A DNA stretch of 64,000 bases from Lytechinus pictus (lineage: Eukaryota), in NCBI RefSeq assembly GCF_037042905.1, contig NC_087245.1:32984001-33048000 (forward strand). Reading direction: 5' to 3'. Below are positions 9,201 through 31,800 of this stretch, in pieces. Each line of letters starts with the position of its first letter. The first letter of the stretch is position 1. The notes under the pieces were generated by a model. It searched no databases. It worked only from the letters and a program-made list of their open reading frames with translations, and had not been told where the DNA came from. The position numbers and the translations under genes are program-made.

Positions 9201-12200
9201 CCATTAAGAGAGAGTTTAAAAATCAATATCCTCAGATAAAGAAGAATCAATCTCTGGAAAGAAAACTTTACTTGTTTTTTTTTTACAAAACTGTTAAAAT
9301 CCCAAACCTTCTTTATCTTCTTCATCTATCTCTTCTGGGGCCCGTTGCAGAAAGAGTAAAAAACGTAAGTAAAAAAATAAATCGCAAGTCCAAAATGCGC
9401 GCTGTTGATTGGTTGAAAATCAAGTTACACATGATTTTTAGAGTTGCGATTGATTGCAACTCTTTCTGCAACGGGCCCCTGACCATTCTGATCCTTGTTA
9501 ACTTACTTTCCTGTTCTCTCCAGCCCTTCGTGCTCTCCGTTATGTCCTCCACCCCCTCCTCCTCCTCCTCCTCCATCTTCTTCATCTATCCCTTCTGCGT
9601 GTCCATTGGGAGTTTGGAAGTGGGACAATCTCTTGGCCTGCGACGGTACCGTCTTGGGCGGCTCAATTCTGATGTTCGGATCCCATGCACCTACAGACAG
9701 AAAAGTATTTTTTAATTAGCTCTTGGGCAACTCATCGCAAATAACCTTAACTTTTTTTTTTATTGGATAGGCACTTAATTGTTAATATGTAAAAGAAGAT
9801 GCTATGTGTACATCACATGTATAATAACTTCTTTTACATAAATATAAAAAAAGCAAAACCGTAAGAGTAATTTTGTAATCTCTGAGTAGAAAAGGAGAAT
9901 GTTACAAGGACACACTGGAGAACCATGCCATATAAATTTTACATGAAGGTATATACAATGTACCAGGGTGATAATGCAACAACATCCATATGTAACTTAC
10001 CAGGTGGAAGAACTGTAACAGAGTCAATGAATTCATCGATGCCTGCAAGAAGGTCCTTGACGTTCTTGGCTTTGTAAGCAACATCATGGAAAATCTAGAG
10101 ATACAGTAGAAAACATTGGATATTTGGGATTTAATCATCTATAGCTTAATTTGCTCTATTTATTCTCAAGCTTCTTGAAAGAAAATAAATATATATGACT
10201 TAACTAAAATGTGCACACACAGAGAAGAAACCTTGAGATTTAACAAACATTGTCTGGTTATTAACATTTTATAAGAGCAGGTTATACTGTTTCGCCTGAT
10301 GCTAGAATATAAGTTTGCAATTCATGACTTTTCTTCAAGAAATTGCAATTCAATTTGTTGTTAGGATCCATACCTTATCTGACATGAGAGTTGCAACGCA
10401 TCTCCCGATCTCATGGTATCGCTTGGTTCCCCCGGACTGCGGGCCGAGGAGGATGAAAAGGAACCTGGTCGGGATGGGGACTTCCGTCAGGTCACCGAGG
10501 GACACCGCCGTCTGGAGGCGAACGAAAGCAATGATCGGACGTGACAGGAAATCCACCTCGCCGATCAAGACGTTGGAGGCCTCCGCACCCTGGGGGATCT
10601 TCCGCATGAAACTGTGCCTGGCCTGGATGTGACGAGAGGGGATAGGAAGAAAAATGAACAAAGCTAAAGGATGTGCCGGTGATTTGACCCTTCTTTCAAG
10701 GGTGTTAGCAAACTGGATAGCATTTGATGAAACCAAGTATCAGTGATTTTTCATTGTACGGTATATGTACTAATCTCCTTGCATTTGATTGGCTCGAAGC
10801 ACGAGTGCCAATGAAAATCACTATGTGTTTACTGAAATGCTTCTCAGATGAAGAAAGAAATTAAAACACAATGTTCTTTCTTTAATCAGGGGCCACTGAA
10901 CTGTTTTGAAAGTTTGGGGGGTGTCTGAAGTCCCCTAAGCTCCCCCTGTTTTGGGGACCCTATAAGTTTATCAAACAACTGCAATGGGGGCAAGCAAGCA
11001 AGCAATGTTCTGAATTTTGCAACTATTATTTAAAGTGATGTTATCTCTTTTTCATATCCCAATGATTTTGTTAATGATCATTTCACTTCATCATTTGAGT
11101 TAAATAAAGCTATCATCTCAAGATTAGAATATGTAAAGCATTATTTGGCCTTGCTTATAAACGGTATTTTAATAGAACAGTCAATGAGTACCTTATCCAG
11201 TCGATATACTCTCCAAAACATCAGTATTACTACTACTACTACAGTTATTAGTATTATTATTACTGTTATTGTTGTTGTTCTTATTATTATCATCATCATT
11301 ATTGCACTGTGTGTAAGCAAGGCCTCAATGTTAACAAAGAGCACATAACATGTTAGTATTGCCATATTCCAACACAAGACACAAATGTAGCAATGCAAAG
11401 ATCATTAGTAAACCCTTTCCCACTCCATGGCGGGTTATACCACATGAAAGAGCTTAATATGTACATGATGATTAAATACATAATTCAGTGCTAGTATGTA
11501 ATGATAACCAAGTGCATGATTGTTAGTATTAATGACAGCAAAAAAAGATTTGTTAGAAATACCCAATCACCAATATGAATATTAAAATGGATATGAAAAG
11601 GAAGAAAGTCACACATTAACAACTAATTACACAGAATTAAAGCGATATATGTGGTAAAATCACCTAGTCAAAAGGAAGAAATGAGCATGAATATGGTTAG
11701 GTATTCAGTTGAATAGGTTCTTTTGTAGATGACCAAGAAATCCTGCGAGTTGGAGGAGGCATTGGTACATGCAGAGAGACATACGATGTGAAACATTGTA
11801 TATTCTTCCCCAGAACCATGACAATACTGAAATCACTATGAGAAGGCAGTACAGTGTACATCAAAGAAAGGAAATAAACACCAAACCAGATATAGGCACA
11901 ACAGTCATGACTACACATTTAAGCAAAGTAATTAGTCATAGAGTTGATGTTTATGATTGATTGCAAATTATCAATACGATCAAACACTCAAACCATCTCC
12001 TCATGGACAATCAATCGCTAAGCTTCATGTTATAGACCCTGGTGGGTGTTTTATAAAGCTGTTCGTAAGTTCGGAGCAACTTTACAAACGGCTAGTGATC
12101 CCCTCTTGTGGTAAATTTTGCGCACCCAATTTTCATAGGTGTTAAAATCAGCTCTTCGGAAAGGATCACCGGTCGTTTGTAAATTCGCTCGTAACTTACG

Positions 12201-15200
12201 AACAGCTCTATGAAACACCCATCGATTTCTCATTTCACAATAATGGTTAACTCTATCACTATGGTAACTACCATAGTGACAGGACACAGCAGCCATTTGA
12301 CACCAAGGTTTCCATGGTAGTTACCATACCCATAATCATAGCTCTTTATTAATCGGGGGCCTCGTGGTTACATAATCCAGGTCAGATTGTATGTTCATTG
12401 CAAGATACATAATTAACCTACCGTAAAAAAAAAGAGACAGAGAGCGTAAAGGTCATAAGAAGTTCTCTCTGAACATCTTATTGTTCCGAAAATTAATTAC
12501 TGTACCTAAACACAGAGCTTGGTTAAAAGAAACATTTCAAAAAAGAAAATCTCTTGAAGAAGTACTGCTTTAAATAAAGAAAGACAAATAGGTGTCACAC
12601 CATCCAGTTGTTAGATCACATCAATATCATCATAAAAAAAGGAAAGGAGAAATGGAAAAAATATATTAAAGAGAAAGAAAATATGAATTAGACAAAGATA
12701 TCAAATTGAATAAGACTAAATGTTACAGGTTGGTGTTCCATAAAGCTTTTCATAAGTTACGAGCAACTGTATGAACGACTGGTGATCCTTTCTTAGAAGC
12801 TTAATCAACACCCAGGAAAATTTGCAGTATATCATTTACCACAAGAAAGAATCACCAGTCGCACGTAAAGTTGCTTGTAGCTTAAGAACAGTTTTAAGAA
12901 CGACTGGTAAACCTTTCTTATGCGCTAAACCATTGCCAGTGAACATTTTGGTGTCTACCATTCACCACAAGAAAGGATCACCAGTCGAACTTAAAGTCGC
13001 TCTTAACTTACAAACAGCTTTATGAAACACCCATCAGGTAAGCACTTGTAAACAAGATTTGCATACTATTGCAAAGTATAAGAAATACAATGCAGCCGTA
13101 CATGTGAAGGTTGCATGAATGTTTCCTGATGGACGAAAGCTTTCTTTTGAAATTTCCATGAACTGTTGCAATTAGTTTTGTAAAGCAAATCCAAAACTTG
13201 TCATCAATATACTCAAAATTCATGTATTACCCAATGTAAGAGTCGTCAACTGCAAACAAACAAATCTATTTTTTTTTTAATGAACATGTTTCAGATTCAC
13301 AAAGATGTAGGTCAATTGTTGATTTGTTTTTGAGGTCTGAGTGGGTGCACTCTAATACAATTGGGACTTTCACACAAGTGCAAGGAAGTAACGCTGTTGA
13401 CGTAGTACCATACCTTTGATGATCGTTTTAATTTAAACGAGTTCTCTGATTTATTAGAATGGAGGGATCCGGATTTACTTGGGACGGAATGGACAGACTT
13501 TGAAAAGTAAAATAAAAAAGGAAGTCATGAAGAAGAAAAAAGAGGCAAACATCAATAAATAAACTATACATCAATCCAGTAATGAAATAGACAGATCTTT
13601 TTGGCAAAATAAACCTGGATCTTTCCCCTTCCCTTTTTTTTTGGGGGGGGGGTATTCTCATACATTGTAAATGTCCAGATGTGAAATTTTATAATCAGCT
13701 TTAATAATATACGTTCATATAAATGTATTAATATTCTTAATATGAACTATTTCTAAGTGCCCCCCCCCCCCCGTTCTGTATTTACTCTGGCAACTTGATT
13801 ATGGCCTGTCCCTGCATTTCCTCTTTTGATCATGGCTATATAATCTTATTTGTTTATTACTAATTTTTCTTACATCAATTAAACAGATAATGGTGTGCTC
13901 TTTATACAAGTGTATTTGATCATTTTTTAGCATGAATAACATGCAATATGACCTCTATCAAAACACATTTTCATATTACTTACTTATTTAAATCTGCCAA
14001 TATTCATGATGAAAAATCTAGATATATTGTAATGTGATTCTAATTAAGTATACAACTTACATGTACAGTGATCTTTTCCAACATGGAAGATAGATAAACC
14101 AAAAATCATATTAATAGTCATTGAATATCAATGAAATTATTAAGTGCAGATGTATATAAAATCACATCAGTGCAGTGTGTACCGTATATAAAAAGAGATT
14201 CAGTCTGTTTATTGATAGAGAAATAGGAAGAATCAACAGCAAACAGTGTGATTACACAAAATATCGTGAATTGTACAAATTAACTGTATTCATTCAATAC
14301 CTTAATGAAAAAAAAAACATTATCTGGAGATATAAGCAAAACACCATATGAACATTAATTCCGCTATTGAGCTTCATATTTTCCATTACTTTGAATTTTA
14401 CGGGTGAGGTCCTCTGGAGACACGACCAGGGTCCCGTTGCATAGTAACTTTGCCATCCAATGGTAACTGCCATGGTAACAAGGCTCAACAGCCAATCAAA
14501 ATCAAGGATTCCATGCGAGTTACCATAGGATAGCAAAGTTACCATAATGGTAACTTTTATTCAATGGGGCCTTTGTGTCGGTTTTAACATCCAAGTTTTG
14601 TACAGTGTATTAAAGGTATCAATTAAACACTTATTTTGATTGGCTAGCTCGCTACATGAATATATTCATTCAAACCAAGGTCACATTACTAGACGCTATT
14701 CCAATAACTTTCTACCACTTAGTCACATTAGCTTACCGTAAACTAGTTACAACTTAATAACTTAATGACTAATAACTAGATAACCTGGAAGTTATTTTAC
14801 TTCATCAATTTTCGCAAGTGAAGGTCATTAAAACAGTTTCCCTCCTTTTTGATGGCACATGTATTTTCAAACTAAACAACAATTACGGTACTGAAAATAT
14901 AGATAAAGTAACACCTTACAAAAACAAAAATACAAAACTGATTTATCTGCCTACCAATATGATAATTCTTAGCAACACCATCAGAGAAGAATAAAAGTAA
15001 AAGTAAGGAATAAGCAGCGAGGATTATAGATTTACAGTCAGACATTGACATTAAGATTTCAAAGGTGTTCAAATAATCACTCATCACAGATAGGAGTGCA
15101 GAATATAGAAATCTGACATTGAAAGTAAATCTAAGTATTAAGTAGGTTTTGAAAGTTGCTTTCGTTATATTCAAAAGTGTGTTTTTTCTTAATAATATTC

Positions 15201-18200
15201 ATTTATACAAAGTAGGAATATCTTTTACCCATTAATAGGTTATATTCAAAAGTGTGTTTTTTCTTAATAATATTCATTTATACAAAGTAGGAATATCTTT
15301 TACCCATCAATAGTTTTTTTTTAGATAATAATTTTGGAGTGAAATAGCCAAGGTAAAAAAAAAATGTTGGTTTTCAATGTAAATTGTATCATGAAATTTC
15401 TTTAGCTCTAGTCATTGACCGGGGGGGGGGGGTAGATAAGAATGGAGTATGAATTATCATGAATGGAGCATGAATTATCAAGATATTAGATTAGGCGATA
15501 ATTTGAATATTTCAACCCCAACCACCATCACTGCAAACGTTGTGTCAGAAAACACATCCCATTATAAGTGCTTTCTAAAAATATACTGTTTAGAACCACA
15601 AATACAATTCTTAACATTTTGCCACACACATTTTCGCTCATAAAACCAAACTTTCACTTTTTCAATCCTTTTGAGAATATTGAGCGTGATAGCAGATGGG
15701 TAATTAGTGTTCCTGAACCAAGAATATCACAAAAATATGTGCCATGTAAACAAAGCGATTGCCATGACAACATACCTTGGACCTCTCAAACCTATCAATA
15801 AGATGCGCTCTGTAAAGTCTTGGTGAATCCACTTTGACCGAGTGGAAAGACTAAAAGTAAACGAACAAATTGTAGGTCAGTAGACATGGATCACAATTTT
15901 TATAATGATCATAAATCAACGATGGATAGAACAAAAATATCATGGACCATGTTGGAACCTTCCGGCATAATCCTGGGATTGCCGTGCGGATCAATTAGGG
16001 TTGTGTTTATACGTGGGTGGTGCTTAAGACAGTTCAGGGAATTTCAATGTTTGATGTATTTTGTCTTTATCAAATCACTGAGTATTGTGTGTGATGGAAG
16101 ATATCTATAAATCCTACTCTAGTGCATTATATGAATTGTGAAATTAAAAAAGTAATGCTTCAACTATTGTTATCTTCTTCTTATAAAATCACTTAAAGCC
16201 AACATGTAAATGTTGCGGTCACCGGTAATGATTGTTTCATGTTCTCTCAAGTATTACACAACCCACATTATCAATCATGTCTATATTTATTTTCTCTGCT
16301 TAAATTTATTGGTTGTTTATCTGTGTATTTATCTTCCTTTTAAAGGTCAAGTCCACCCCAGTGAAATATTGATTTGAATAAATAGAGAAAAATCAAACTA
16401 GCATAACACTGAAAATTTCATCAAAATTGGTTGTAAAATAAAGAAAGTTATGGCATTTTAAAGTTTCACTTATTTTTCACAAAACAGTGATATGCACAAC
16501 TCTGTGACATGCAAATGAGTCAGTCGATGATGTCCATCACTCACTTTTTCTTTTGTTTTGTTATTGTTTGAATTACCGGTATACAATATTTCATTTTTTA
16601 CAGATTTGACCATAGGGACCGACTTGACTGAATCACATAGTATTAAACAATGCTAATTCCACATTTTCAGGGAGAAATTGATCACTGTTTCACTTGACAA
16701 TGAGGAGAAACTTAGGATATTTCATATTTCATGTAATAAAATACAAAAGAAATAGTGAGTGGATGACGTCATCAGTCTCCTCATTTGCATACCAACCAGG
16801 ATGTGCATATAACTGTTTTGTGAAATTAAGCGAAACTCTAAAATGTCATAACTTTCTTATTTTACATCCGATTTTGATGAAATTTTCATTGTTATGGGTG
16901 TTGGATTTTTTACTTTTTACTCAAATCAATTTTTTATTTGGGTGGATTTGTCCTTTAATGTTCTATCAATTATTATTATTACAGACCAATTCTGGGTACA
17001 TGTAGCTTGGTCGGGGAGGGAGACCCTCGGGTCACAGTTATCAAGTTAGCTTTTCCCATACCCAGGCAGCTAAGCTACATGTACCCATCTACGGCTCTGC
17101 TTTTATTCATACTTTGTTGAAATTTTATTGTATATTGTAATTGCCGAATTGATAATAAATAAATAAATGAGATGAAAGTTTTCCCAATACAATCCTATAC
17201 ACTGTAGATGTCTGTAGTACAACTGAAATACACAATACTTCTTTAAAAGGCATGTCTTGAAAAAAAAAAACAATTATAAAAAAATCCCATCCAACTCTGA
17301 CCTGACATTGAGAAACATTTTGGCAGTGTTGTAAATTCAATATTTAACACACTCATGATTAATTTGATAATTAAGACAATAATAAAGGGATAACGTACAC
17401 CCATTACATTTATCTGAACTTGTCAATTGAATTAGTTTTGTGCCCCACAGCAAACTCTGCACAAATCTAGTTATTGTTTTCTTTGAAAGTTGCCTATTTT
17501 TTTTCACTGACATCATTTAACAATATTGTATAAAAGAGTCATGTCACATCATAACAACACACTGAAATGAGAGATAAGGATTCAAGAAATGAAGCAAATG
17601 TGAACTAAAGATGGTAGATTAATTTCTTTTGTTTTATCTCTTTTGTTTTATCTTTTGTTTTATCTCTTCCTAGTTCACTTGTTTTATTTTATTGTGCTCA
17701 ACATCAAACACCATTGAGGTGATACCAGTCTTTGTTTTAGCATAGTGTGGTGCCAAATAAGAAACCCTTGAACAATGCATCTATGAGAGGATTGAAGCCC
17801 GGACTTGTATTGTTAGTAATCATTGTAATCTGAGACAGTTGGGCTATTTGGAACTGTTGAGAGCAAGTTTCTATAGTTAATATCTGTATCACAAAGGCTA
17901 TTGTAATGGTGTTGAAGAAAAGCAAGTTATATACAGAGTACCATATATGGCACTTCAAAAGTATAAAAAGAGACTGTGCCATTAGGTCATTGAAAGTTTT
18001 CCAAACGGATCTATATTGTGGTCAGTAGAGAGACACCCTGTGCAGCAAATCAACTCGTTACCATGGCAACACATACCTTAGATCTTCCATGTCTAAAATC
18101 CAGCTTATGTTTAATGGATTCTGGTTTACCTCTATGATAGGATTCAAGAGACTAAAAAAAAAATGAAATAAAAAAAAGCAAAGATGAATGGTTTATCCCA

Positions 18201-22861: not shown

Positions 22862-25800
22862 CACAAACAATTCACATAATGCACATTGAGTGCCATGCAA
22901 ATATATTGGTAGTAGATACAAGAGAGGAAGGGTATATTACAAAGAAGTATTTGAAGAAGAAGTTTTATGGGAAAAATATGACTTTTTTTTTCATTAAACC
23001 ATATGGATGACGTAATAATATTATGAGGAGCTCAGCATTATGGGGAGGGAGGAAGCTGAAATAATTTTATAACATAGGTAGGCATGAACAGGGGCCTGGA
23101 GATTTGATCTACTTTGTATTCAATTTTGCTATCATCTGTAGAAAGAGAATAAATCTCGTATAATGGAGTAAAAGCTAGCAGTTTCCCTTTCACTAAAAAA
23201 AAAATATGTTGCTAAAGTCAGCAATGAATTCCTTTCACTTTTGATCAGACAAAATTCATCTTCCACAGTAAATTACATTATGATATTAGAGCCTATCGAG
23301 AGAAAGGTACATGTACCCCACTTTCATGGCACCACAAATGGTGGAAAAGTAGAAATGAAAACTTTAAATTAGCCTCCAAAATTATCAAGGATGGGAAATA
23401 TTATCTGTTTTGTTTTTGTCGAACTTTGTTTATATTCGCTCGCAAAGGCATGAATCGTGTAGAATTATAATCGAGAATCTGAACTAAATATGAAGATAAA
23501 TTCTGCAAGATTTCGATGGAATTCCCAAGTTATGTCTAGTTTCTTAAGATGTCTGTGAGACCCAGGGAGGGGAAATTTGTAAAACTTCTGGTTCTAAATC
23601 AACCACCTGGGGATAATGGGAGGGTCCCATCAAAATGTTGCAGAATTTATCTTCACAAACTTCAGATTCTTGATTCACAATTCTGTATAATTTGAACAAA
23701 GACTAAATAAAAATAAATAATCTTACTGCTTTTAAAGACATAACCAGTTTGATTTTTCATTTCTAATGATTAAAACATAATTCAATGGGCTTTCGCAATC
23801 GTTTGGTCACAATATATGTTGCACTGAGTCGTACCACCAATTGTGAAAGGGGCTTCAATGGAGGCTCAGAAGCAAGGAAATTGGGGGGGGGGGGGGCGAG
23901 GTCGAAGAATGAATGAGGGGGAGCATGGAGGGGGAAATCAGGATGAGGAAGAGGCACAGAGGAAGGCAGGAGGGGGAACAACAAGCACATATATCATGTA
24001 AAATCCAAGAGCAGTTATCATCTTTAAGAATAAAAAAAAAGATAAATAAAAAGATAAATAAAATTTGTCGAACCGTCATACTAAGACCCTGGAGGTTTTG
24101 CGGCAGAGACATTCTAGCTTCACTCAGTCTTTTCTGTGAGAGGGGGAAAAACGACGCCACAAAAAGCAGCAGCGGAGAAAGAAAAACCATGTCACATCAA
24201 ACAGAATTATATATAGCAAACATCAATATAACACCAAGACCATGCAAATAAATAATGTTAGAATGGAAGTCCTATATATACTAAATAGTGTAGCATCAGT
24301 ATACCGTGATCGACTCCATTCAAATATGATGATAAATACAGGATCTTAAAGGTAGGATATTCATGATATTTCTATTCAATGGAATGATAAAATCTATGGG
24401 AAAATAATTCAAACTTAGTGATGAACTCATTATAGCTTAGCTAACATATTAGTGCATCTAAATTTTTAAAACTGTTTCAATTGTAGGATAATTTGCAGCT
24501 AATTTCTTACTTTTTTTCAGTGAAAGTTTTAGTGAAATGCTTGAATGCATTTAACTATTACATACACTCTTTTAGCAATACATTATAAACAAAACGTTTC
24601 TTTTTAATTGGCAACAGTGAAATTAGCTCACTCTTTTTTAAAACATTCTTTTCATGGTGACATTTCTTGGTCATAATCTGACATACCTGCAAGCATTTTT
24701 TACAAGGATGAAATTTATTAACAACCTTGATGAAAAATGCTTTGTAGAAATTATTTCATTTAGCTTTAATTATTTAATGTCACTTTTCATAGCTGCTTCA
24801 TGAAATTTTTGCAAAAATAAATCAATAAATCGACAACTTAGCAATGATTTATAAAAGCTGATCACCAATTCAATGTGACCAGTGCATTGTGACGAGTTTC
24901 ACTTTAAATCAAAGACTTAAATATTTTCCAAATTATTACGAAAATGGAGTTATGAAAACTTAATGAACAATTTAAAACCAAATAACAAAATCAAAGCTTC
25001 ATCAAAACAGTGCATATAAACATGAAAAGTTTTAAATTCAAAATTCAGGTGCCATTGCTGGATTAGGAGTTCTCACCAAAGCAGGATGGAGGACTTTTTC
25101 ACGAAATGTATTAGTGAATGAAATGACAATGGATACACATGAATGAAAATGTTGTTAGTTACAAATAATGATGCAATGGGCAGATTGTGATGATAATGAT
25201 AAAATGGTGGCAGAGGTGGTTATGATTGAGCATGACGAAAAAGATGATGATGAAAATGATGACAACTACAACAACGATGTTTATGACGAATATTATGACG
25301 ATGATGACTATGACGACAATAATTATGATGACAATGATTATTAAAATTACGATGAAAGTGATGATGATGGTGGTGGGGAAGAGGAAGATGATGATGATGA
25401 TGATCAGATGAAGATGATGATTGATGATACATATATGATGGTGTTGATGTTAATGTTAATGTTAATAAAGCTATCATTTTCTTGGTGATGGTGGCAATGA
25501 AATCATGATTTGAATAGTCATTATCATTCTAACAGCGCTCAAAATAATGCTGTGAAATTTACTCCATATTGTTATATTCATGTTATATATTGTTTCAATG
25601 ATTTCTGAAAGATTCACAAGATTGTGCAATGTCATAATAATGTGATATCTGTGATGAGTTCATCTGCATCACAGAAGATGGTCAGAAGAATGCAAAAATG
25701 TGATGAAATTAAAAAGATAAGTTAACACGATAACTATGCAGGTGAAATGTACATGACCACTGACAGAAGAAAGAGAAGGACATGCACGTACATGTATGAG

Positions 25801-28800
25801 GGTTTATGAAATTAACAAAGGCAGAATGAAACTAAATAAGTTCTTTGTCAATTCTCAGTAATATTCATCCAATGAATACATCACCTTATGAATAACTTCA
25901 ATAGACTATAATTAGATTATACTGTTTTTATGCCCTTTTCTCATCTCATATTGAATTTCAATTATAGAAACCAAAGAAAACCATAATTTAATCCAAAATG
26001 ATATGTTTGAAATTAGCAGGTTGATTAATTACCAAGACAGTTGGTTAAAGTTGATAGAGGATAACTAATTTTCAACTAACAACTCTGATAGGAGCTGGGA
26101 AAGTGGAATGTGACTATTATTAAGTGCATGGAGATGACTAGTGAATGATAAGAGAAAAGAAACAATAAATATCAATCAATGCATCTCATACCTATTTAAA
26201 CACATTTAAAAAAATCAAGTCTGAGAATCAAATTTGTCTGAAATGACAGTATCAATAAAACTGGCACTATTGACAATGAGCAGGGAAAAACTGAAACGGG
26301 TGCTCGGGATAATCTCGCACCTGAAATGGTCAAAAGAGCCATGGAGACTCAAAAGGATGCCCTGGAGCTCCATCCATTGCAATGATATTAAGCTTATCCA
26401 AAGTTGCAGATTTAGGCAGTAAATTGTTGAAGTAACCTCGAAAAGATATATATATATTTATTTTTTTGTAACAATGAGGTATGTGACACATTGAAGAAAT
26501 GAATTGTGGGTGAACACATAAACAAGATGACATGGTGATCACATGGTGAAGTGAGCATGAAAGGAGGGCCAGAATGGAATCCTCAAAAGATGACAAAGAA
26601 CAGAAGGAAAAGTAGAGTGACATGAAAAGGCTCGGCAGAAACAGCAGCTTGGTGCTTTTTCTTTTTCATGACTATGACCACTGAGAGAAAAAATAAATCG
26701 GCTATGACCAGAGAGAAAACGTAATCCAGCCTGCTTTAAAACAGCAAAATTCACCACTAACACCTTCAAAACATCATCAAAAACTCATCAAAACAAGGAT
26801 AACCAACATCAAAACACCTGCAAAACAAGATGACATCTTGACCAAGAAAATGAATTAAATAAATAAAAAAATCATGAAATGGATGGTTACAGCCAGTATG
26901 GTTGCAGGTTGCACGTTGGGGAATAAAAAGGAAAGCAAGGCACAACACCTTTATGGATTTTTATTAAAAAGAATAAACACCGTAAAATAAACGATAAGGG
27001 GAAAAAATGAAATTGGAAGCCAACCGAGAGACTATGTCCGTGTAGGTTGTGCGGGATGGAGAGACGTGCTTCACTGAATCTTTTCTGTGGGGGAGAGAGA
27101 CAAGAAAAAAAAGCCAAGATACATAGAGGGCAGGTGTGTTTGCACTACTACACATTATCCACATCAGGGGTGCTACCACACTTGGTATAAAAAACAAACA
27201 GTGTGGATGAATATACAAAGCACAGTCAAATCAGACTTGCACAGCTCAATGGACAAAAGATGTCACAAGAATTCATGTTTTACATTCATGAATTTTTTTT
27301 CTTCTCCTAAATAACATGTTCCAAAATCAATGCAGAAATTTATTGATATTCAGTTGCTGCACATACATGTTAAAGTATCGCTGCTATGCCAGCTCAATTA
27401 TCTGCGTTAGTTTGGGTTATTCCGTGAAATATTTGTAAATGTAAAATCTGATTTATGAATAAGTGCTGTGTTTATTCATAGGACAGTGTACTTTCAAGTA
27501 AATTCCACACAAGAAAAGTGACATTTCAACAACAGAAATTAGCCTGTTGAATAACAATTGGAAAAGGTACGAGGTGTAGGTTCGTTGTCAAAAAGCGTTT
27601 ACTTGCAAACGTAATTCAGTCCCGCTTCATGTAAGTGAAGGACCATGCATCATTTAATACTGCCCAAAAGTTGCATGAATTGTACCATTCATATTATCTA
27701 CATGTAAATTGATTTCAGACTTGTTAATCATGAGAACGTCATTTCTTCCCATATGGAATTGACTCAAACTAATATTTCAAAACCAACAATAACCAGGAAA
27801 TTTTACATTTACATGTACAGGGCACAAGATATTACACTACAAAGAAGTGATATTTGATGGGGACATTGACAAATTAACAGGTGTAAATATGGGAGCAAAC
27901 TAGAAATCATATTTTACTACTAATATGTTGATAATGACATTACAACATAATGAACAATAGAGGGCAGTATATCCACATTTTTTGTGCAAAGACATGAGAC
28001 TGCATGTATTTCACAACAATTTTTGCTATACAAATCTTCATGAATCTGTATCTACCCAGTACTAAAGGCGATTATAAAAATTACATATCTACATGTAAAA
28101 ACACACAAATGTTCACACAACAATGAAATATGTATTAGAGGGAATTTTGGATTCTTATGAGCAAAAATATTTAAATATATACGACACAATTAATCAGTAT
28201 ACATTAAATTGTTCTTAACTATTATTCCATAAGTAAATGCTTCTACCAAAATAAAAGCCTACTGCAACTAAAATAAAAAGGCCACTTCAATATGATTTTA
28301 ACAGTCAAATAAACAATGCATAAATATCTACACTCGTCATGCATGAAGTTTAAACACTATTATGTATTGTAAAGTACAGAATATACATGTACCACACTAC
28401 CACATAAATTTTAGGCATTTTTTAAATATATCTTATTCATACTAAAACTTAATAGGAAGTAAAGATTAATTCTCACAATAAAAAAAAATCTAATCCATTC
28501 ACAGGCTATTATTGGTGGTTATGATTATGATTATATTTTCCAATTCAATTTTTTAATACTTCACATCGAAACTGTCTGATAACACAGTCAATATAAATAA
28601 TCATTACCTGTATCAGACATCAGGGTCCTGTTTCATAAAACACTTGTTGCAACAACAAATAGACAACAAATTCATTATCAACCAATCAGATTGAACGATT
28701 TCAGTAGCTTTTTACTGTGTTGCAAATTTGTTATCATAACAAGTTTTATGAAACGGGTCCCTGGGCAGGTAATTTACAAAACTGTATTGCCATAGTATTT

Positions 28801-31800
28801 TACGAACATTAGGAATGAATGGGTTAAATGGTTTGTATTTTGCTTAGTCACTCTGCACGCTCTGACTCTGCATGCAGAGACGATGCAAAATATACCTTTG
28901 AATTTTCCATGGATTCGCTTCCGGGAACCTGAAGACGTGTGCAAAGGGATACGCATCAGTTTGAAACAGTTACGTGCAGTAACAACATGCGTCACAATGA
29001 TTGATAAATACGTCACAAAGGTAAAGCTATGAGATATTGGTATAAACATCAATAGTAAAATATCTCCAGGCATCTTTATTATTTTGCTCTATACTGACTA
29101 GCTCTACTTTCAGGGAGCATCAAATATAAAAGAACTTTGTTGCCCTCATCTAAAGACTCGGAACAATATGATTCTGTTCGGAAAACATATTTGGTGTTCC
29201 CCTCAGGCCTTATTCGTCTATTCACATGATGAATTTTATATTACAATTTACATAAGGTAAACTTTGATTTGTATTTTTTAACCTTTGCAATGACTAAATA
29301 TTAAGTGCAAATACACAAATACATGTACAGGTATTCTTGAAATAGATTCTCTTACCAGCTACATTCAAATATGTATTCATTTTCTTCCAATTCAATACAA
29401 ACTTACAAAGTGGTTTGTCAATCGTTTGCCACTGCTGGTAGTGATTACTTTATCCACACATATTTCACAGAGATAAGCCCATCAGGACGTTTCCTTTCCA
29501 AAAATGTCTAGGTTTATAACGATCCCATTCCTTTATCTACTGATGTACATGTAGTATTACATTACTCTCATGTTTTTAAATACTGCACTTTAGAAATATG
29601 TAGGTATATGAGCTGTCCTCTGATTAAAGATTTGTGTTTGTCTTTAAAGAAAGCGTGTAAGCTCCCTCTTTTTATCAAATTTAAGTAACATTAAAGAAAT
29701 TGTGTCAAATGCACTCTTAATAAATTGATGTTACCTTTATAGAAAGCATGCTAACTTCATTCCTCTTTTAATCAAAGTTACCATTGTAAAAAAAACATTG
29801 TTTTTTTAAAAAAACCTTTATAATAAGCATGTGATCTGCCCTCTGTCAATAATTAAGGTTACTTTAAATCCTTAACAAGAAAATGGGGACTAGATCGAGG
29901 TTGGCATAGAGTCAACTTATAAAAGACCTTCCTGGTTATTCCGAACATCGATGAAAGAATCAGGAAAGAGGGCGAGAAACATTAATGTGAAAGAGGATTC
30001 CAATTTTTTTCTCTCTTCATAAAATGACATGATCAATTTTTCATCAGGGACTTTTATAAAAGTCGAAACCAGTTGCTTCTTTTGGGGGTACAGGTGGGTG
30101 ACTCATGATAGCGAATCGATTGTCGGAAAAAACAAAATGTGGTTTGGACCACAACCAAGTGTCTTTAAAGCACCTACATCTCACCAACCTCATTTCCAAA
30201 TGACTATATTTTTTAATGTTCTACAACTTAGAATATAATATCCATTGGAGTATTTCCCACCTGATTGTCATGCAGTATCCTAAATATAACTGATCATTAC
30301 AATATCAAGATATTTTATGTTTAATGTGTATTTAACGTCTGATTTAAACTTGACTTGGAAATCAAACAATTTATTGGCTACACTAACATAATGGATAACT
30401 TCTAGCCGTGTAATGTAAAATTGCACCAATTTACTCATCTCATACCCTACTCTTTGACTAATTTCCAATATTTCACAAAAACAAATTATATATATGTTAA
30501 ATACCAACAGACCCTTAATAGTTCTTTACTGACAACCATTCCTTTTAATGTGTCTTTTCACGCAATATGATCTAGAGCATGAGATAGTTCTAAATGACTC
30601 ACTTCTAATTCACACAAATGTCATAACATGTTTAGGCTTTCCCTGTCAATGTACTGGCAATGCTGTGTTTCATTGTTCATTTCAATGATTCATTGTTGTT
30701 TTTCAATAGTACAGGTCATGACACACACTACCACCTTACAAAAATGTCTGAGAACAAATGTGAACACTTATTTTAACCTTGGTTCTCATTTTCATGTCAA
30801 CGAAAACCTGAAGACATTTTCTATCTACTTCTTGATATTAGTGGCAAAACGATTAAGTACACACTTTAAATTGACTGCATAAATCACCTCATACATCTCT
30901 TTAAAGAGCATCAATTACCTTTTCTACTTTGTGGCTTATAATCACCTCTCATTATATATACGAGCAAGGACATATATCGCCATGGTAGCCAAATCTATAT
31001 CCATGGCAACCTAACAAGCACTAATATCGGTGCGTGGAGATCCTTGGGCAATACAATATTCTTGGTAGAAAAAGATGAAATTCTAACCTCCGTCAACACC
31101 TTGTACAAGAACAGAAAGAGAGAGAGATAAAATGAGATATCAATTATGGTTAGTATTCATCAATCACCATGGTAACGTACCTTTAGACTGTGATGACTTG
31201 AGACCTTGGGGAGACTCCCGGATGCACATGTATCTGACTTGCCTAGTTCACCGGAGCTGGTCTTGACCATGAGTGAGCTAGGGGAGGTTTGGCTGTTCTG
31301 TATGTTAGGGGATGACCCATGGGACGTATGTAGTGCCCCTTGAGCAGCTGGTGGAGTAAAACAAAATAATCATAAAAATAAACAACCATCACAAAATATT
31401 TCTTTAACCCTCCATATATTGTTACAATGATTTTGAAAATATCTTCCAAGTGTGGACCAGGGAGCATTCCATCAACCTGACAAGTTGTCAGATCTGACAA
31501 GTATCCTTGATTGTGACTGACTGAGAAGCAAATGTCTGACTGTTACTATGGTAATCGTCAGAGAATGACATCTTATCAGTCCTGACAACTTTCATGAAAT
31601 GGAATCATGAAGTGATGATGATGATGATAACTTCATAATTATCATCATCATCACCATCATCATCACCATCAATCATCATCATCTATCATCATCATCACCA
31701 TCATCATCATCCTCATCATCATTTATCATCATCATCATCATCTATCATCACCATCATCAATCATCATCATAATAATTTTTTTTAATCTGTAGTAAGAATT

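What the first reader, a model, noticed from the sequence alone, without database searches (positions are those of the whole stretch)
13414..18151. Second paralogous exon family: three S-x-x-S...RS(S)K cassettes spaced ~2.3 kb apart
Seen: all three start with codon TCT (SVHSV, SFHSV, SLESY), end R-S-(S)-K with AAG|GTATG, are 84/75/75 nt, and start 2362 and 2301 bp apart. Two share the TTACTTTT acceptor context. Inference: an old tandem exon triplication with diverged interiors and conserved ends, as in mutually exclusive exon clusters.
Basis: partly seen in the sequence, partly recalled or inferred. Interest (0 to 1): 0.7.

Follow-up and report, generated by a model that had tools for sequence, protein, structure and literature searches.

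The report
Optional exon trio in urchin bicarbonate transporter
The three short segments are real, conserved, optional coding exons in the flexible regulatory loop of a sea-urchin sodium-bicarbonate transporter gene, already present in public gene models, and they are mixed freely rather than used one at a time.

Summary
On the minus strand, 18151-18077, 15850-15776 and 13497-13414 are open, phase-0 AG|TCT...AAG|GTATG segments of 75, 75 and 84 nt.

They lie in a Lytechinus pictus SLC4 Na+/HCO3- cotransporter gene. Their position is the disordered variable loop (Nt-VR2), just before the FMRKIP exon.

All three are already in RefSeq isoform models of L. pictus, L. variegatus and S. purpuratus. 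They are isolated islands of conservation in otherwise unalignable introns, with only in-frame indels and dN/dS about 0.3.

The mutually exclusive reading fails. The models hold C3+C2+C1, C3+C2, C3+C1, C2+C1, C2 alone and none. All lengths are multiples of three and the introns are 1.3-2.4 kb.

Common ancestry is plausible but only moderately supported. Similarity sits at the ends (SFHS.../...RSK), is stronger in S. purpuratus, and is absent in the interiors and flanks. The 2.3-kb spacing is specific to L. pictus.

The upstream constitutive exon and the cassettes share a conserved donor-adjacent near-palindrome (GTTRYCATGGYRAY). Its copies can pair strongly as RNA. Its role is unknown.

My own read evidence is thin: only the middle cassette shows depth.

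Other first-reader notes of this scan cover the same stretch.

The parts
18077..18151 (-). Cassette C3, 75 nt, [25 protein letters not shown]. Optional phase 0-0 exon.
   Evidence: It is in L. pictus models X1/X4/X5/X10. Identity to S. purpuratus is 91%.
15776..15850 (-). Cassette C2, 75 nt, [25 protein letters not shown]. Optional phase 0-0 exon.
   Evidence: It is the only cassette with stranded RNA depth: bin 15700-15899 at 0.7-6.5x, first mate on + only. The block is unique in the genome.
13414..13497 (-). Cassette C1, 84 nt, [28 protein letters not shown]. Optional phase 0-0 exon with a weak AAG acceptor in Lytechinus.
   Evidence: The S. purpuratus orthologue is 81 nt, SFHSYPSKSESLRSNKSDSSYRFKRSK.
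18057..18070 (-). Near-palindrome GTTGCCATGGTAAC at intron positions +7 to +20 after the C3 donor. It opens a ~60-nt conserved intronic block.
   Evidence: (the +1..+60 stretch is 83% identical to S. purpuratus).
15758..15771 (-). Near-palindrome GTTGTCATGGCAAT at intron positions +5 to +18 after the C2 donor.
13396..13409 (-). Degenerate copy GGTACTACGTCAAC after the C1 donor. The S. purpuratus orthologue keeps GTTACCATAGCAAC.
31163..31176 (-). The same element, GTTACCATGGTGAT, after the donor of the upstream constitutive exon.
   Evidence: It is also present in Diadema (GTTACCATAGCAAC) and absent in the sea star Asterias.
31181..31347 (-). Constitutive exon ending ...[14 protein letters not shown]. 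It is the 5' neighbour of the whole cassette array.
28896..28928 (-). Optional 33-nt microexon [17 protein letters not shown] lies about 20 nt into the downstream intron.
   Evidence: (L. variegatus X15).
27025..27084 (-). Optional 60-nt exon [21 protein letters not shown].
24074..24133 (-). Optional 60-nt exon [21 protein letters not shown], a paralogue of A.
10374..10622 (-). Constitutive exon [19 protein letters not shown]..., the start of the second conserved part of the Band 3 cytoplasmic domain. It is the 3' neighbour of the array.

Best explanation
The three segments are genuine, independently optional cassette exons of a Lytechinus pictus SLC4 Na+-coupled bicarbonate transporter gene on the minus strand.

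Together with three further optional exons upstream (a 33-nt microexon and the 60-nt pair A and B), they fill the last intron of the intrinsically disordered variable region Nt-VR2. This region lies between the two conserved halves of the N-terminal cytoplasmic domain.

Every cassette is a multiple of three in phase 0, so any subset can be spliced in. Each adds 25-28 residues rich in Ser, Lys, Arg and His.

Because each cassette ends R-S-K and begins S-x-x-S, two adjoining cassettes write an R-S-K-S site across the exon junction. Inclusion of all three raises the number of [RK]xxS/T motifs in the loop from 3 to 9.

The likely function (inferred) is to tune the length and the kinase or partner-binding content of a regulatory linker. 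This is what optional cassettes do in vertebrate NBCn1 and NBCn2.

The three cassettes probably descend from one ancestral cassette by tandem duplication in the urchin lineage. I put this sub-claim at about 0.55.

Shown: exon status, position in the protein, frame compatibility, conservation, and co-inclusion in gene models.

Inferred: the phospho-regulatory role, the common ancestry, and any role of the donor-adjacent palindromes.
For: Gene identity and position:
- Pfam finds HCO3_cotransp and Band_3_cyto.
- The FMRKIP exon aligns to human NBCe1 residue 225 and NBCn1 residue 417.

Species and exact models:
- The window encodes L. pictus XP_063956771 exactly across 16 resolved junctions, including C3, C2 and C1.

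Combinatorial use:
- RefSeq isoforms contain C3+C2+C1, C3+C2, C3+C1, C2+C1, C2 alone and none.

RNA:
- Stranded depth in the C2 bin only, in the gene's orientation, in three runs.

Selection:
- The cassettes are identical, or differ by 1 aa, in L. variegatus, and are intact with in-frame indels in S. purpuratus.
- Exon identity to S. purpuratus is 78-91%, against 42-58% in distal flanks. dN/dS is 0.32.
- The cassettes are isolated blastn islands in the intron.

Lineage restriction:
- The sea-star intron is 1.4 kb and holds no cassettes. Diadema has A and B and at most one C-like 57-nt candidate.
- No similarity to 141 non-echinoid SLC4 proteins.

Motif counts and composition.

Ancestry: end similarity and donor-flank ranks.

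Background: Nt-VR2 is disordered and carries optional cassettes in vertebrate Na+-coupled bicarbonate transporters (PMC4664831).
Against: - RefSeq XP models are automatic predictions, and I could not see their supporting reads.
- My single read-laying run was swamped by repeats. It listed no cassette-cassette junctions. C3 and C1 had essentially no depth, and the faint C1 depth in run X24 is no higher than that run's intronic background.
- A search for transcript-derived protein fragments carrying the cassettes found none.
- Two transcript-derived full-length proteins and the S. purpuratus 1214-aa protein skip all three cassettes, so they may be minor forms.
- The phosphorylation role rests on motif reading alone.
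- For common ancestry, the interiors are not significantly similar and the flanks show no collinear similarity.
Confidence: 0.8

Rival explanations
1. A mutually exclusive exon cluster: exactly one of the three paralogous exons enters each mRNA, enforced by competing RNA pairing or some incompatibility.
For: - The cassettes have similar length and phase, and similar ends.
- Self-complementary elements follow the donors, with strong predicted mutual pairing.
Against: - At least nine RefSeq models in three species carry two or three of the cassettes together, and others carry none.
- All lengths are multiples of three, so co-inclusion is not punished by a frameshift.
- The introns are 1.3-2.4 kb and all GT-AG, so there is no steric or spliceosome-type incompatibility.
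- No docking site distinct from the selectors was found.
Confidence: 0.03
2. Real optional exons, but not paralogues. They arose independently, and their similar ends reflect shared constraints: the AAG|GTATG donor context, a junction-encoded R-S-K-S motif, and a shared intronic regulatory element.
For: - Interior similarity is not significant.
- No collinear flank similarity.
- AAG|GT is the usual donor context.
- The donor-adjacent element also follows the non-homologous upstream constitutive exon.
- The same 14-mer occurs in dispersed repeats of this genome, so it can arise or be delivered independently.
Against: - The S. purpuratus orthologues are clearly more alike: C2 and C1 share SFHS, K, S, R, F and RSK, with p = 0.0002.
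- C2 and C1 share 12 of the first 15 exon nucleotides.
- The three lie adjacent in one intron, and Diadema has at most one C-like candidate. That pattern suits a later expansion.
Confidence: 0.35
3. The cassettes, or at least their 3' ends and donors, were recruited from copies of a dispersed repeat that carries GGTATGTTGCCATGGTAAC. Their likeness would then come from the repeat, not from exon duplication.
For: - That 19-mer class occurs 55 times in the genome against 0 for the reversed control, nearly all as one exact sequence inside a repeat of at least 600 bp.
- It contains a donor-like GGTATGT next to the palindrome.
Against: - The repeat consensus matches the cassette loci only over the 14-16-nt palindrome.
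- The cassettes and their palindromes predate the Lytechinus-Strongylocentrotus split.
- The palindrome after the upstream constitutive exon is shared with Diadema.
Confidence: 0.08
4. Splicing noise or annotation artefacts: intronic pseudo-exons without function.
For: - Low or absent read depth on C3 and C1 in four runs.
- Several full-length transcript-derived proteins skip the cassettes.
Against: - Frames stay open over the Lytechinus-Strongylocentrotus divergence, with in-frame indels only.
- dN/dS is 0.32, and exon identity is far above that of the flanks.
- Intronic blocks next to each donor are conserved.
Confidence: 0.04

Closest known systems
Optional cassettes of vertebrate Na+-coupled SLC4 transporters in Nt-VR2: NBCn1/SLC4A7 cassettes I, II and IV; NBCn2/SLC4A10 cassette A; NBCe1 cassette I
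   Same: - Same gene family.
- Same disordered variable region between the two conserved parts of the N-terminal cytoplasmic domain.
- In-frame optional inclusion that gives many isoforms.
- In vertebrates, some of these cassettes carry partner-binding sites, for example calcineurin on NBCn1 cassette II (PMC4664831 and PMC4115197).
   Different: - No detectable sequence similarity.
- Here there is an array of six small exons of 33-84 nt, rather than one large or one small cassette.
- Three of them look like tandem paralogues.
- The array is restricted to sea urchins among the echinoderms examined.
- No function has been tested.
Mutually exclusive tandem exon clusters (Dscam, 14-3-3 zeta and srp types, with docking and selector RNA pairing)
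   Same: - Tandem, similar-sized, same-phase exons of probable common origin.
- Conserved intronic elements with strong RNA-RNA complementarity next to each variable exon.
   Different: - The exons are co-included and also skipped altogether.
- The complementary elements lie after the donors and are self-complementary copies of one motif, not selectors matched to a separate docking site.
RFX X-box (GTNRCC N0-3 RGYAAC); the consensus is recalled from general knowledge, not tested here
   Same: The C3 element GTTGCCATGGTAAC, and GTTACCATAGCAAC of S. purpuratus C1 and the Diadema upstream exon, fit the consensus letter for letter.
   Different: - They sit 5-20 nt inside introns directly after splice donors, not in promoters.
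- The C2 copy and the copy after the upstream exon each depart from the consensus at two positions.
- No binding or expression evidence exists.

Membership tests
SLC4 Na+-coupled bicarbonate transporter gene | Band 3 cytoplasmic domain plus HCO3- transporter membrane domain | tested here: met
   PF07565 at E = 6e-41 and PF00955 up to 2e-28. The best solved relatives are NBCe1, NBCn1 and NDCBE.
Optional Nt-VR2 cassettes of SLC4 transporters | Located between Nt-CR1 and Nt-CR2 of the cytoplasmic domain | tested here: met
   The cassettes lie between ...[16 protein letters not shown]... and [10 protein letters not shown]. FMRKIP opens the second conserved block. The region is defined in PMC4664831.
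Optional Nt-VR2 cassettes of SLC4 transporters | In-frame exon present in some transcripts and absent in others | tested here: inconclusive
   Met at the level of RefSeq models in three species. My own reads show depth on C2 only and no listed junctions.
Optional Nt-VR2 cassettes of SLC4 transporters | Sequence homology to a named vertebrate cassette | tested here: not met
   The best BLASTP E-value is 0.68 against 141 non-echinoid SLC4 proteins. The resemblance is positional and functional, not one of descent.
Mutually exclusive exon cluster | Tandem exons of like size and phase with sequence similarity | tested here: inconclusive
   Sizes are 75, 75 and 84 nt, all phase 0. The ends are similar and the interiors are not.
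Mutually exclusive exon cluster | Exactly one exon of the cluster per mRNA | tested here: not met
   Models exist with three, two, one and none of the cassettes.
Mutually exclusive exon cluster | A mechanism enforcing exclusivity: frameshift on co-inclusion, intron too short, U2/U12 mismatch, or docking-selector pairing | tested here: not met
   All lengths are multiples of three. The introns are 1.3-2.4 kb and all GT-AG. Only mutually complementary palindromes after the donors were found, with no separate docking site.
Tandem exon duplication (paralogous exons) | Similarity beyond what composition and splice consensus give | tested here: inconclusive
   Shuffle p-values range from 0.0002 to 0.07 for whole cassettes. 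Donor flanks rank first to fourth of 78-136 pairs. The interiors and the wider flanks show nothing.

The most novel reading that the evidence does not exclude
The near-palindromic element placed 5-20 nt after the donors of the upstream constitutive exon and of C3, C2 and C1 may be a splicing selector of a new kind. Every copy is complementary to every other, so any two copies can pair in the pre-mRNA. Predicted energies are -24 and -20 kcal/mol for the best pairs, against -7.7 +/- 2.9 for other donor pairs. Such pairing would loop out whatever cassettes lie between the two copies and so produce the observed free combinations. Alternatively, the same sequence, a letter-perfect RFX X-box in some copies, may act on the DNA as a protein roadblock that slows the polymerase and favours inclusion of the weak exon just upstream.
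Probability: 0.1. Interest if true: 0.7.

Novelty: new member of a known kind. Interest (0 to 1): 0.3.

Why it matters
Sea-urchin bicarbonate transporters of this family matter for intracellular pH control and for building the calcite larval skeleton (SpSlc4a10, PMC5986267). I did not establish whether this gene is that one: a second SLC4 gene lies about 105 kb away.

An array of six optional exons could give dozens of isoforms of the regulatory linker. That offers a route to cell-type-specific control of acid-base transport in calcifying cells, gut, sperm and neurons.

The finding also shows that the variable loop of SLC4 transporters has gained optional cassettes independently in urchins and in vertebrates. 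The loops of a crinoid and a nemertean protein suggest the same.

For the scan, the main value is corrective. The exons are real and already annotated, and the mutually exclusive reading is wrong.

Tried and rejected
- Read laying (one call allowed). The 6-kb stretch contains several dispersed repeats, which took nearly all the reads and all the listed joints and loose ends. No cassette junction could be read, so this gives neither support for nor evidence against co-inclusion.
- Run X24's depth of about 1x over C1 equals that run's intronic background, so I do not count it.
- A search for short transcript-derived protein fragments spanning the cassettes found only three hits, all to the FMRKIP part.
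- Pairwise local alignment of the L. pictus peptides alone was not significant (p = 0.08-0.4). Significance appeared only with global alignment and with the S. purpuratus orthologues.
- A dot-plot style blastn of 2.3 kb around each cassette showed no collinear similarity.
- Repeat-derived origin: the repeat consensus matches the cassette loci only over the palindrome.
- Covariation in the palindromes is not convincing. C3 G4 to A keeps a pair. S. purpuratus C2 has a double change to a C.A mismatch. Position 11 of the copy after the upstream exon varies freely.
- The motif is not a general donor feature of the genome. AAGGTAYGTTRYCATGG occurs 4 times against 1 for the control, and two of the four are in this gene. 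One other hit is a real exon donor in a spectrin-repeat-like gene, and one is not an exon.
- Papers: I found no mention of splice variants of the urchin gene.
Full report
**What is in the sequence**

Read on the minus strand, the three segments are exactly as described:

- C3, 18151..18077, 75 nt: [25 protein letters not shown].
- C2, 15850..15776, 75 nt: [25 protein letters not shown].
- C1, 13497..13414, 84 nt: [28 protein letters not shown].

Each is preceded by AG, begins TCT, ends AAG and is followed by GTATG. All are open in phase 0.

**The host gene**

ORFs at the low-coordinate end of the window match the SLC4 membrane domain. The exon at 10374-10622 matches the Band 3 cytoplasmic domain. 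Its sequence ...[15 protein letters not shown]... aligns to residue 225 of human NBCe1 and residue 417 of human NBCn1.

A library-wide search returned a 1218-aa Lytechinus variegatus 'sodium bicarbonate cotransporter 3-like' protein at 99% identity.

The window itself is Lytechinus pictus. Protein XP_063956771 maps onto it with 16 splice junctions that reproduce the protein exactly, and C3, C2 and C1 are three of its exons. The window is G000:C1:32984001-33048000.

**Position in the protein**

The cassettes lie between the constitutive exon ending ...[14 protein letters not shown] (31181-31347) and the FMRKIP exon. This is the variable region Nt-VR2, which separates the two conserved parts of the N-terminal domain.

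The region is intrinsically disordered. In vertebrate Na+-coupled SLC4 transporters it carries optional cassettes: I, II and IV of NBCn1, A of NBCn2 and I of NBCe1 (PMC4664831).

The same 20-kb intron holds three more optional exons:

- a 33-nt microexon at 28896-28928;
- exon A, 60 nt, at 27025-27084;
- exon B, 60 nt, at 24074-24133, a paralogue of A.

**How the cassettes are used**

RefSeq models of L. pictus, L. variegatus and S. purpuratus show the loop in many forms:

- A+B+C3+C2+C1
- B+C3+C2+C1
- A+B+C3+C2
- A+B+C3+C1
- B+C2+C1
- A+B+C2
- B+C2
- C2+C1
- C3+C1
- A alone, B alone, the microexon alone, or nothing

This is free combination, not mutual exclusion. All lengths are multiples of three, the introns are 1.3-2.4 kb, and all are GT-AG. 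So nothing in the anatomy would enforce exclusivity.

These models are automatic predictions whose supporting reads I could not inspect. My own read evidence is thin.

- Only the C2 bin showed depth clearly above background: 0.7-6.5x, first mate on the + strand only, as expected for a minus-strand RNA, in three rRNA-depleted runs sampled at about 6%.
- C3 and C1 had essentially none, and no cassette junctions were listed.
- A search for transcript-derived protein fragments with the cassettes found none.
- Two transcript-derived full-length proteins and the 1214-aa S. purpuratus protein skip all three.

The cassette-bearing forms may therefore be minor or tissue-restricted.

**Are the cassettes functional coding sequence?**

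I fetched the orthologous genes of L. variegatus (L001), S. purpuratus (L002), Diadema setosum (L003) and the sea star Asterias rubens (L004).

- In L. variegatus, C2 and C1 are identical at the nucleotide level and C3 differs by one base.
- In S. purpuratus all three are intact, with in-frame length changes only: C2 is 78 nt and C1 is 81 nt.
- Against S. purpuratus the exons are 78-91% identical. The first 60 intron bases after each donor are 67-83% identical. Flanks further out are 42-58% identical, which is effectively unalignable.
- dN/dS is 0.32 for the three cassettes and 0.17 for A+B.
- In a blastn of the whole interval, the three cassettes stand out as isolated conserved islands.

This is the signature of coding exons under purifying selection with conserved regulatory sequence next to the donor.

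**Age and spread**

The sea star joins the two constitutive exons across a 1.4-kb intron with no cassettes. The sea star, sea cucumber and crinoid proteins retrieved lack these cassettes; one crinoid protein (Anneissia) carries an unrelated 11-residue insert at the same point.

Diadema has A and B. For the C family it has only one candidate, a 57-nt phase-0 segment with good splice sites. It encodes NEFANHSRSNSFKSKKFSK, which resembles the C-terminal half of C1.

The cassettes show no similarity to 141 non-echinoid SLC4 proteins. They are a sea-urchin innovation. The pattern fits one cassette expanding to three before the Lytechinus-Strongylocentrotus split, but this rests on one unverified candidate.

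**Are the three paralogues?**

- With the L. pictus peptides alone, local alignment is not significant, and the 2.3-kb neighbourhoods share no collinear similarity.
- Global alignment against shuffles gives p = 0.004 (C3-C2), 0.07 (C3-C1) and 0.003 (C2-C1).
- The S. purpuratus orthologues are more alike, at 0.019, 0.0002 and 0.0002. C2 SFHSVSCKVDSPRLHRMHHNKFERSK and C1 SFHSYPSKSESLRSNKSDSSYRFKRSK are the clearest pair.
- Stripped of five N-terminal and three C-terminal residues, little remains.
- At the DNA level, the exon-end and donor regions of the upstream exon, C3, C2 and C1 take the top ranks among all donor pairs of the gene in all three species.

So 'conserved ends, diverged interiors' is accurate. 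Common descent is the simplest account, but convergence under shared constraints is not excluded.

The 2.3-kb periodicity is not evidence for duplication. It is 1344/2132 bp in L. variegatus and 1427/1602 bp in S. purpuratus.

**The donor-adjacent palindrome**

Directly after four consecutive donors lies GTTRYCATGGYRAY:

- upstream exon: GTTACCATGGTGAT
- C3: GTTGCCATGGTAAC
- C2: GTTGTCATGGCAAT
- C1: GTTACCATAGCAAC in S. purpuratus, degenerate in Lytechinus

A and B lack it. The copy after the upstream exon is also present in Diadema and absent in the sea star.

In the 812-Mb genome, AAGGTAYGTTRYCATGG occurs four times, two of them here.

Because the motif is nearly self-complementary, the copies can pair with one another as RNA. 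Predicted energies are -24.1 kcal/mol (upstream exon with C3) and -20.2 (C3 with C2), against -7.7 +/- 2.9 for other donor pairs. The same tendency holds in the other two species.

Substitutions between species do not show convincing compensation.

The same 14-mer also sits in dispersed repeats of this genome. Those repeats match the cassette loci only over the palindrome.

I therefore record the element as real, conserved and unexplained. RNA looping and a DNA-level X-box are both speculative.

**Likely function (inferred)**

The cassettes are 23% Ser, 14% Lys, 10% Arg and 9% His. Including all three raises the [RK]xxS/T motifs in the loop from 3 to 9.

Two R-S-x-S motifs are written exactly across the C3|C2 and C2|C1 junctions, so they exist only when neighbouring cassettes are co-included.

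This suggests a splice-tunable, phosphorylation-rich linker. The parallel is with vertebrate cassettes, where NBCn1 cassette II binds calcineurin (PMC4115197, PMC4664831).

**Verdict**

- The exons are real and already annotated.
- The triplication idea is plausible.
- The mutually exclusive reading is rejected.
- This is a lineage-specific new member of a known kind of feature.

Noticed in passing
window 24074-24133 and 27025-27084 (minus strand): The 60-nt exon pair A and B, noted elsewhere as candidate mutually exclusive exons, is co-included in many RefSeq models and also used singly. Both have unusual GTT donors (TCG|gttggc and ACG|gttcga), conserved in L. variegatus and S. purpuratus and of the same GTTGG type in Diadema.
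   Followed up: partly
window 14400-14580; similar sequence at 12250-12340: A ~130-bp element that matches on both strands, with more than 2700 first-look candidates in the genome. It is rich in CCATGGTAAC-like half-sites and heavily covered by 90-95%-identical RNA reads.
   Followed up: partly
G000, 55 places; copies fetched as L007-L018: A separate dispersed repeat of at least 600 bp carries the exact 19-mer GGTATGTTGCCATGGTAAC, a donor-like GGTATGT fused to a perfect X-box-like palindrome. It matches the cassette loci only over the palindrome.
   Followed up: partly
window 31135-31150 (minus strand, about +28 after the donor at 31181): A perfect branch-site-like TACTAAC lies about 28 nt downstream of the upstream constitutive exon's donor. 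It is conserved in L. pictus, L. variegatus and S. purpuratus.
   Followed up: no
window 11310-11616 (minus strand): Conserved non-coding blocks lie 700-1000 nt upstream of the FMRKIP exon. They contain several conserved CTAAC/TACTAAC motifs, possibly distant branch points for the many alternative donors. There is no open frame.
   Followed up: partly
window 28896-28928 (minus strand): A 33-nt microexon, [11 protein letters not shown], is used in L. variegatus isoform X15. TGCATG lies about 20 nt downstream. No S. purpuratus counterpart was found by tblastn or blastn.
   Followed up: partly
L003:27254-27310 (Diadema setosum): A candidate unannotated 57-nt phase-0 cassette, NEFANHSRSNSFKSKKFSK, has a good acceptor and a GTATGT donor. 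It resembles the C-terminal half of C1.
   Followed up: partly
G000:C1:32888742-32888981: A second SLC4 gene lies on the same strand about 105 kb away, 63% identical over the FMRKIP exon. It may be a tandem paralogue.
   Followed up: no
P0180 (Lineus longissimus) and P0002 (Anneissia japonica), loop before FMKKIP: A nemertean SLC4 loop holds repeated ...KRRFS... units, and a crinoid has an 11-residue insert at the same point. This hints that the loop gains basic, Ser-containing cassettes repeatedly in different phyla.
   Followed up: no
L006 (G000:C17:27527900-27528700, minus strand): A 111-codon open exon of a spectrin-repeat-like gene ends ...EETK|GTACGTTGTCATGGAG. This is the same donor-plus-motif arrangement as in this gene.
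   Followed up: no
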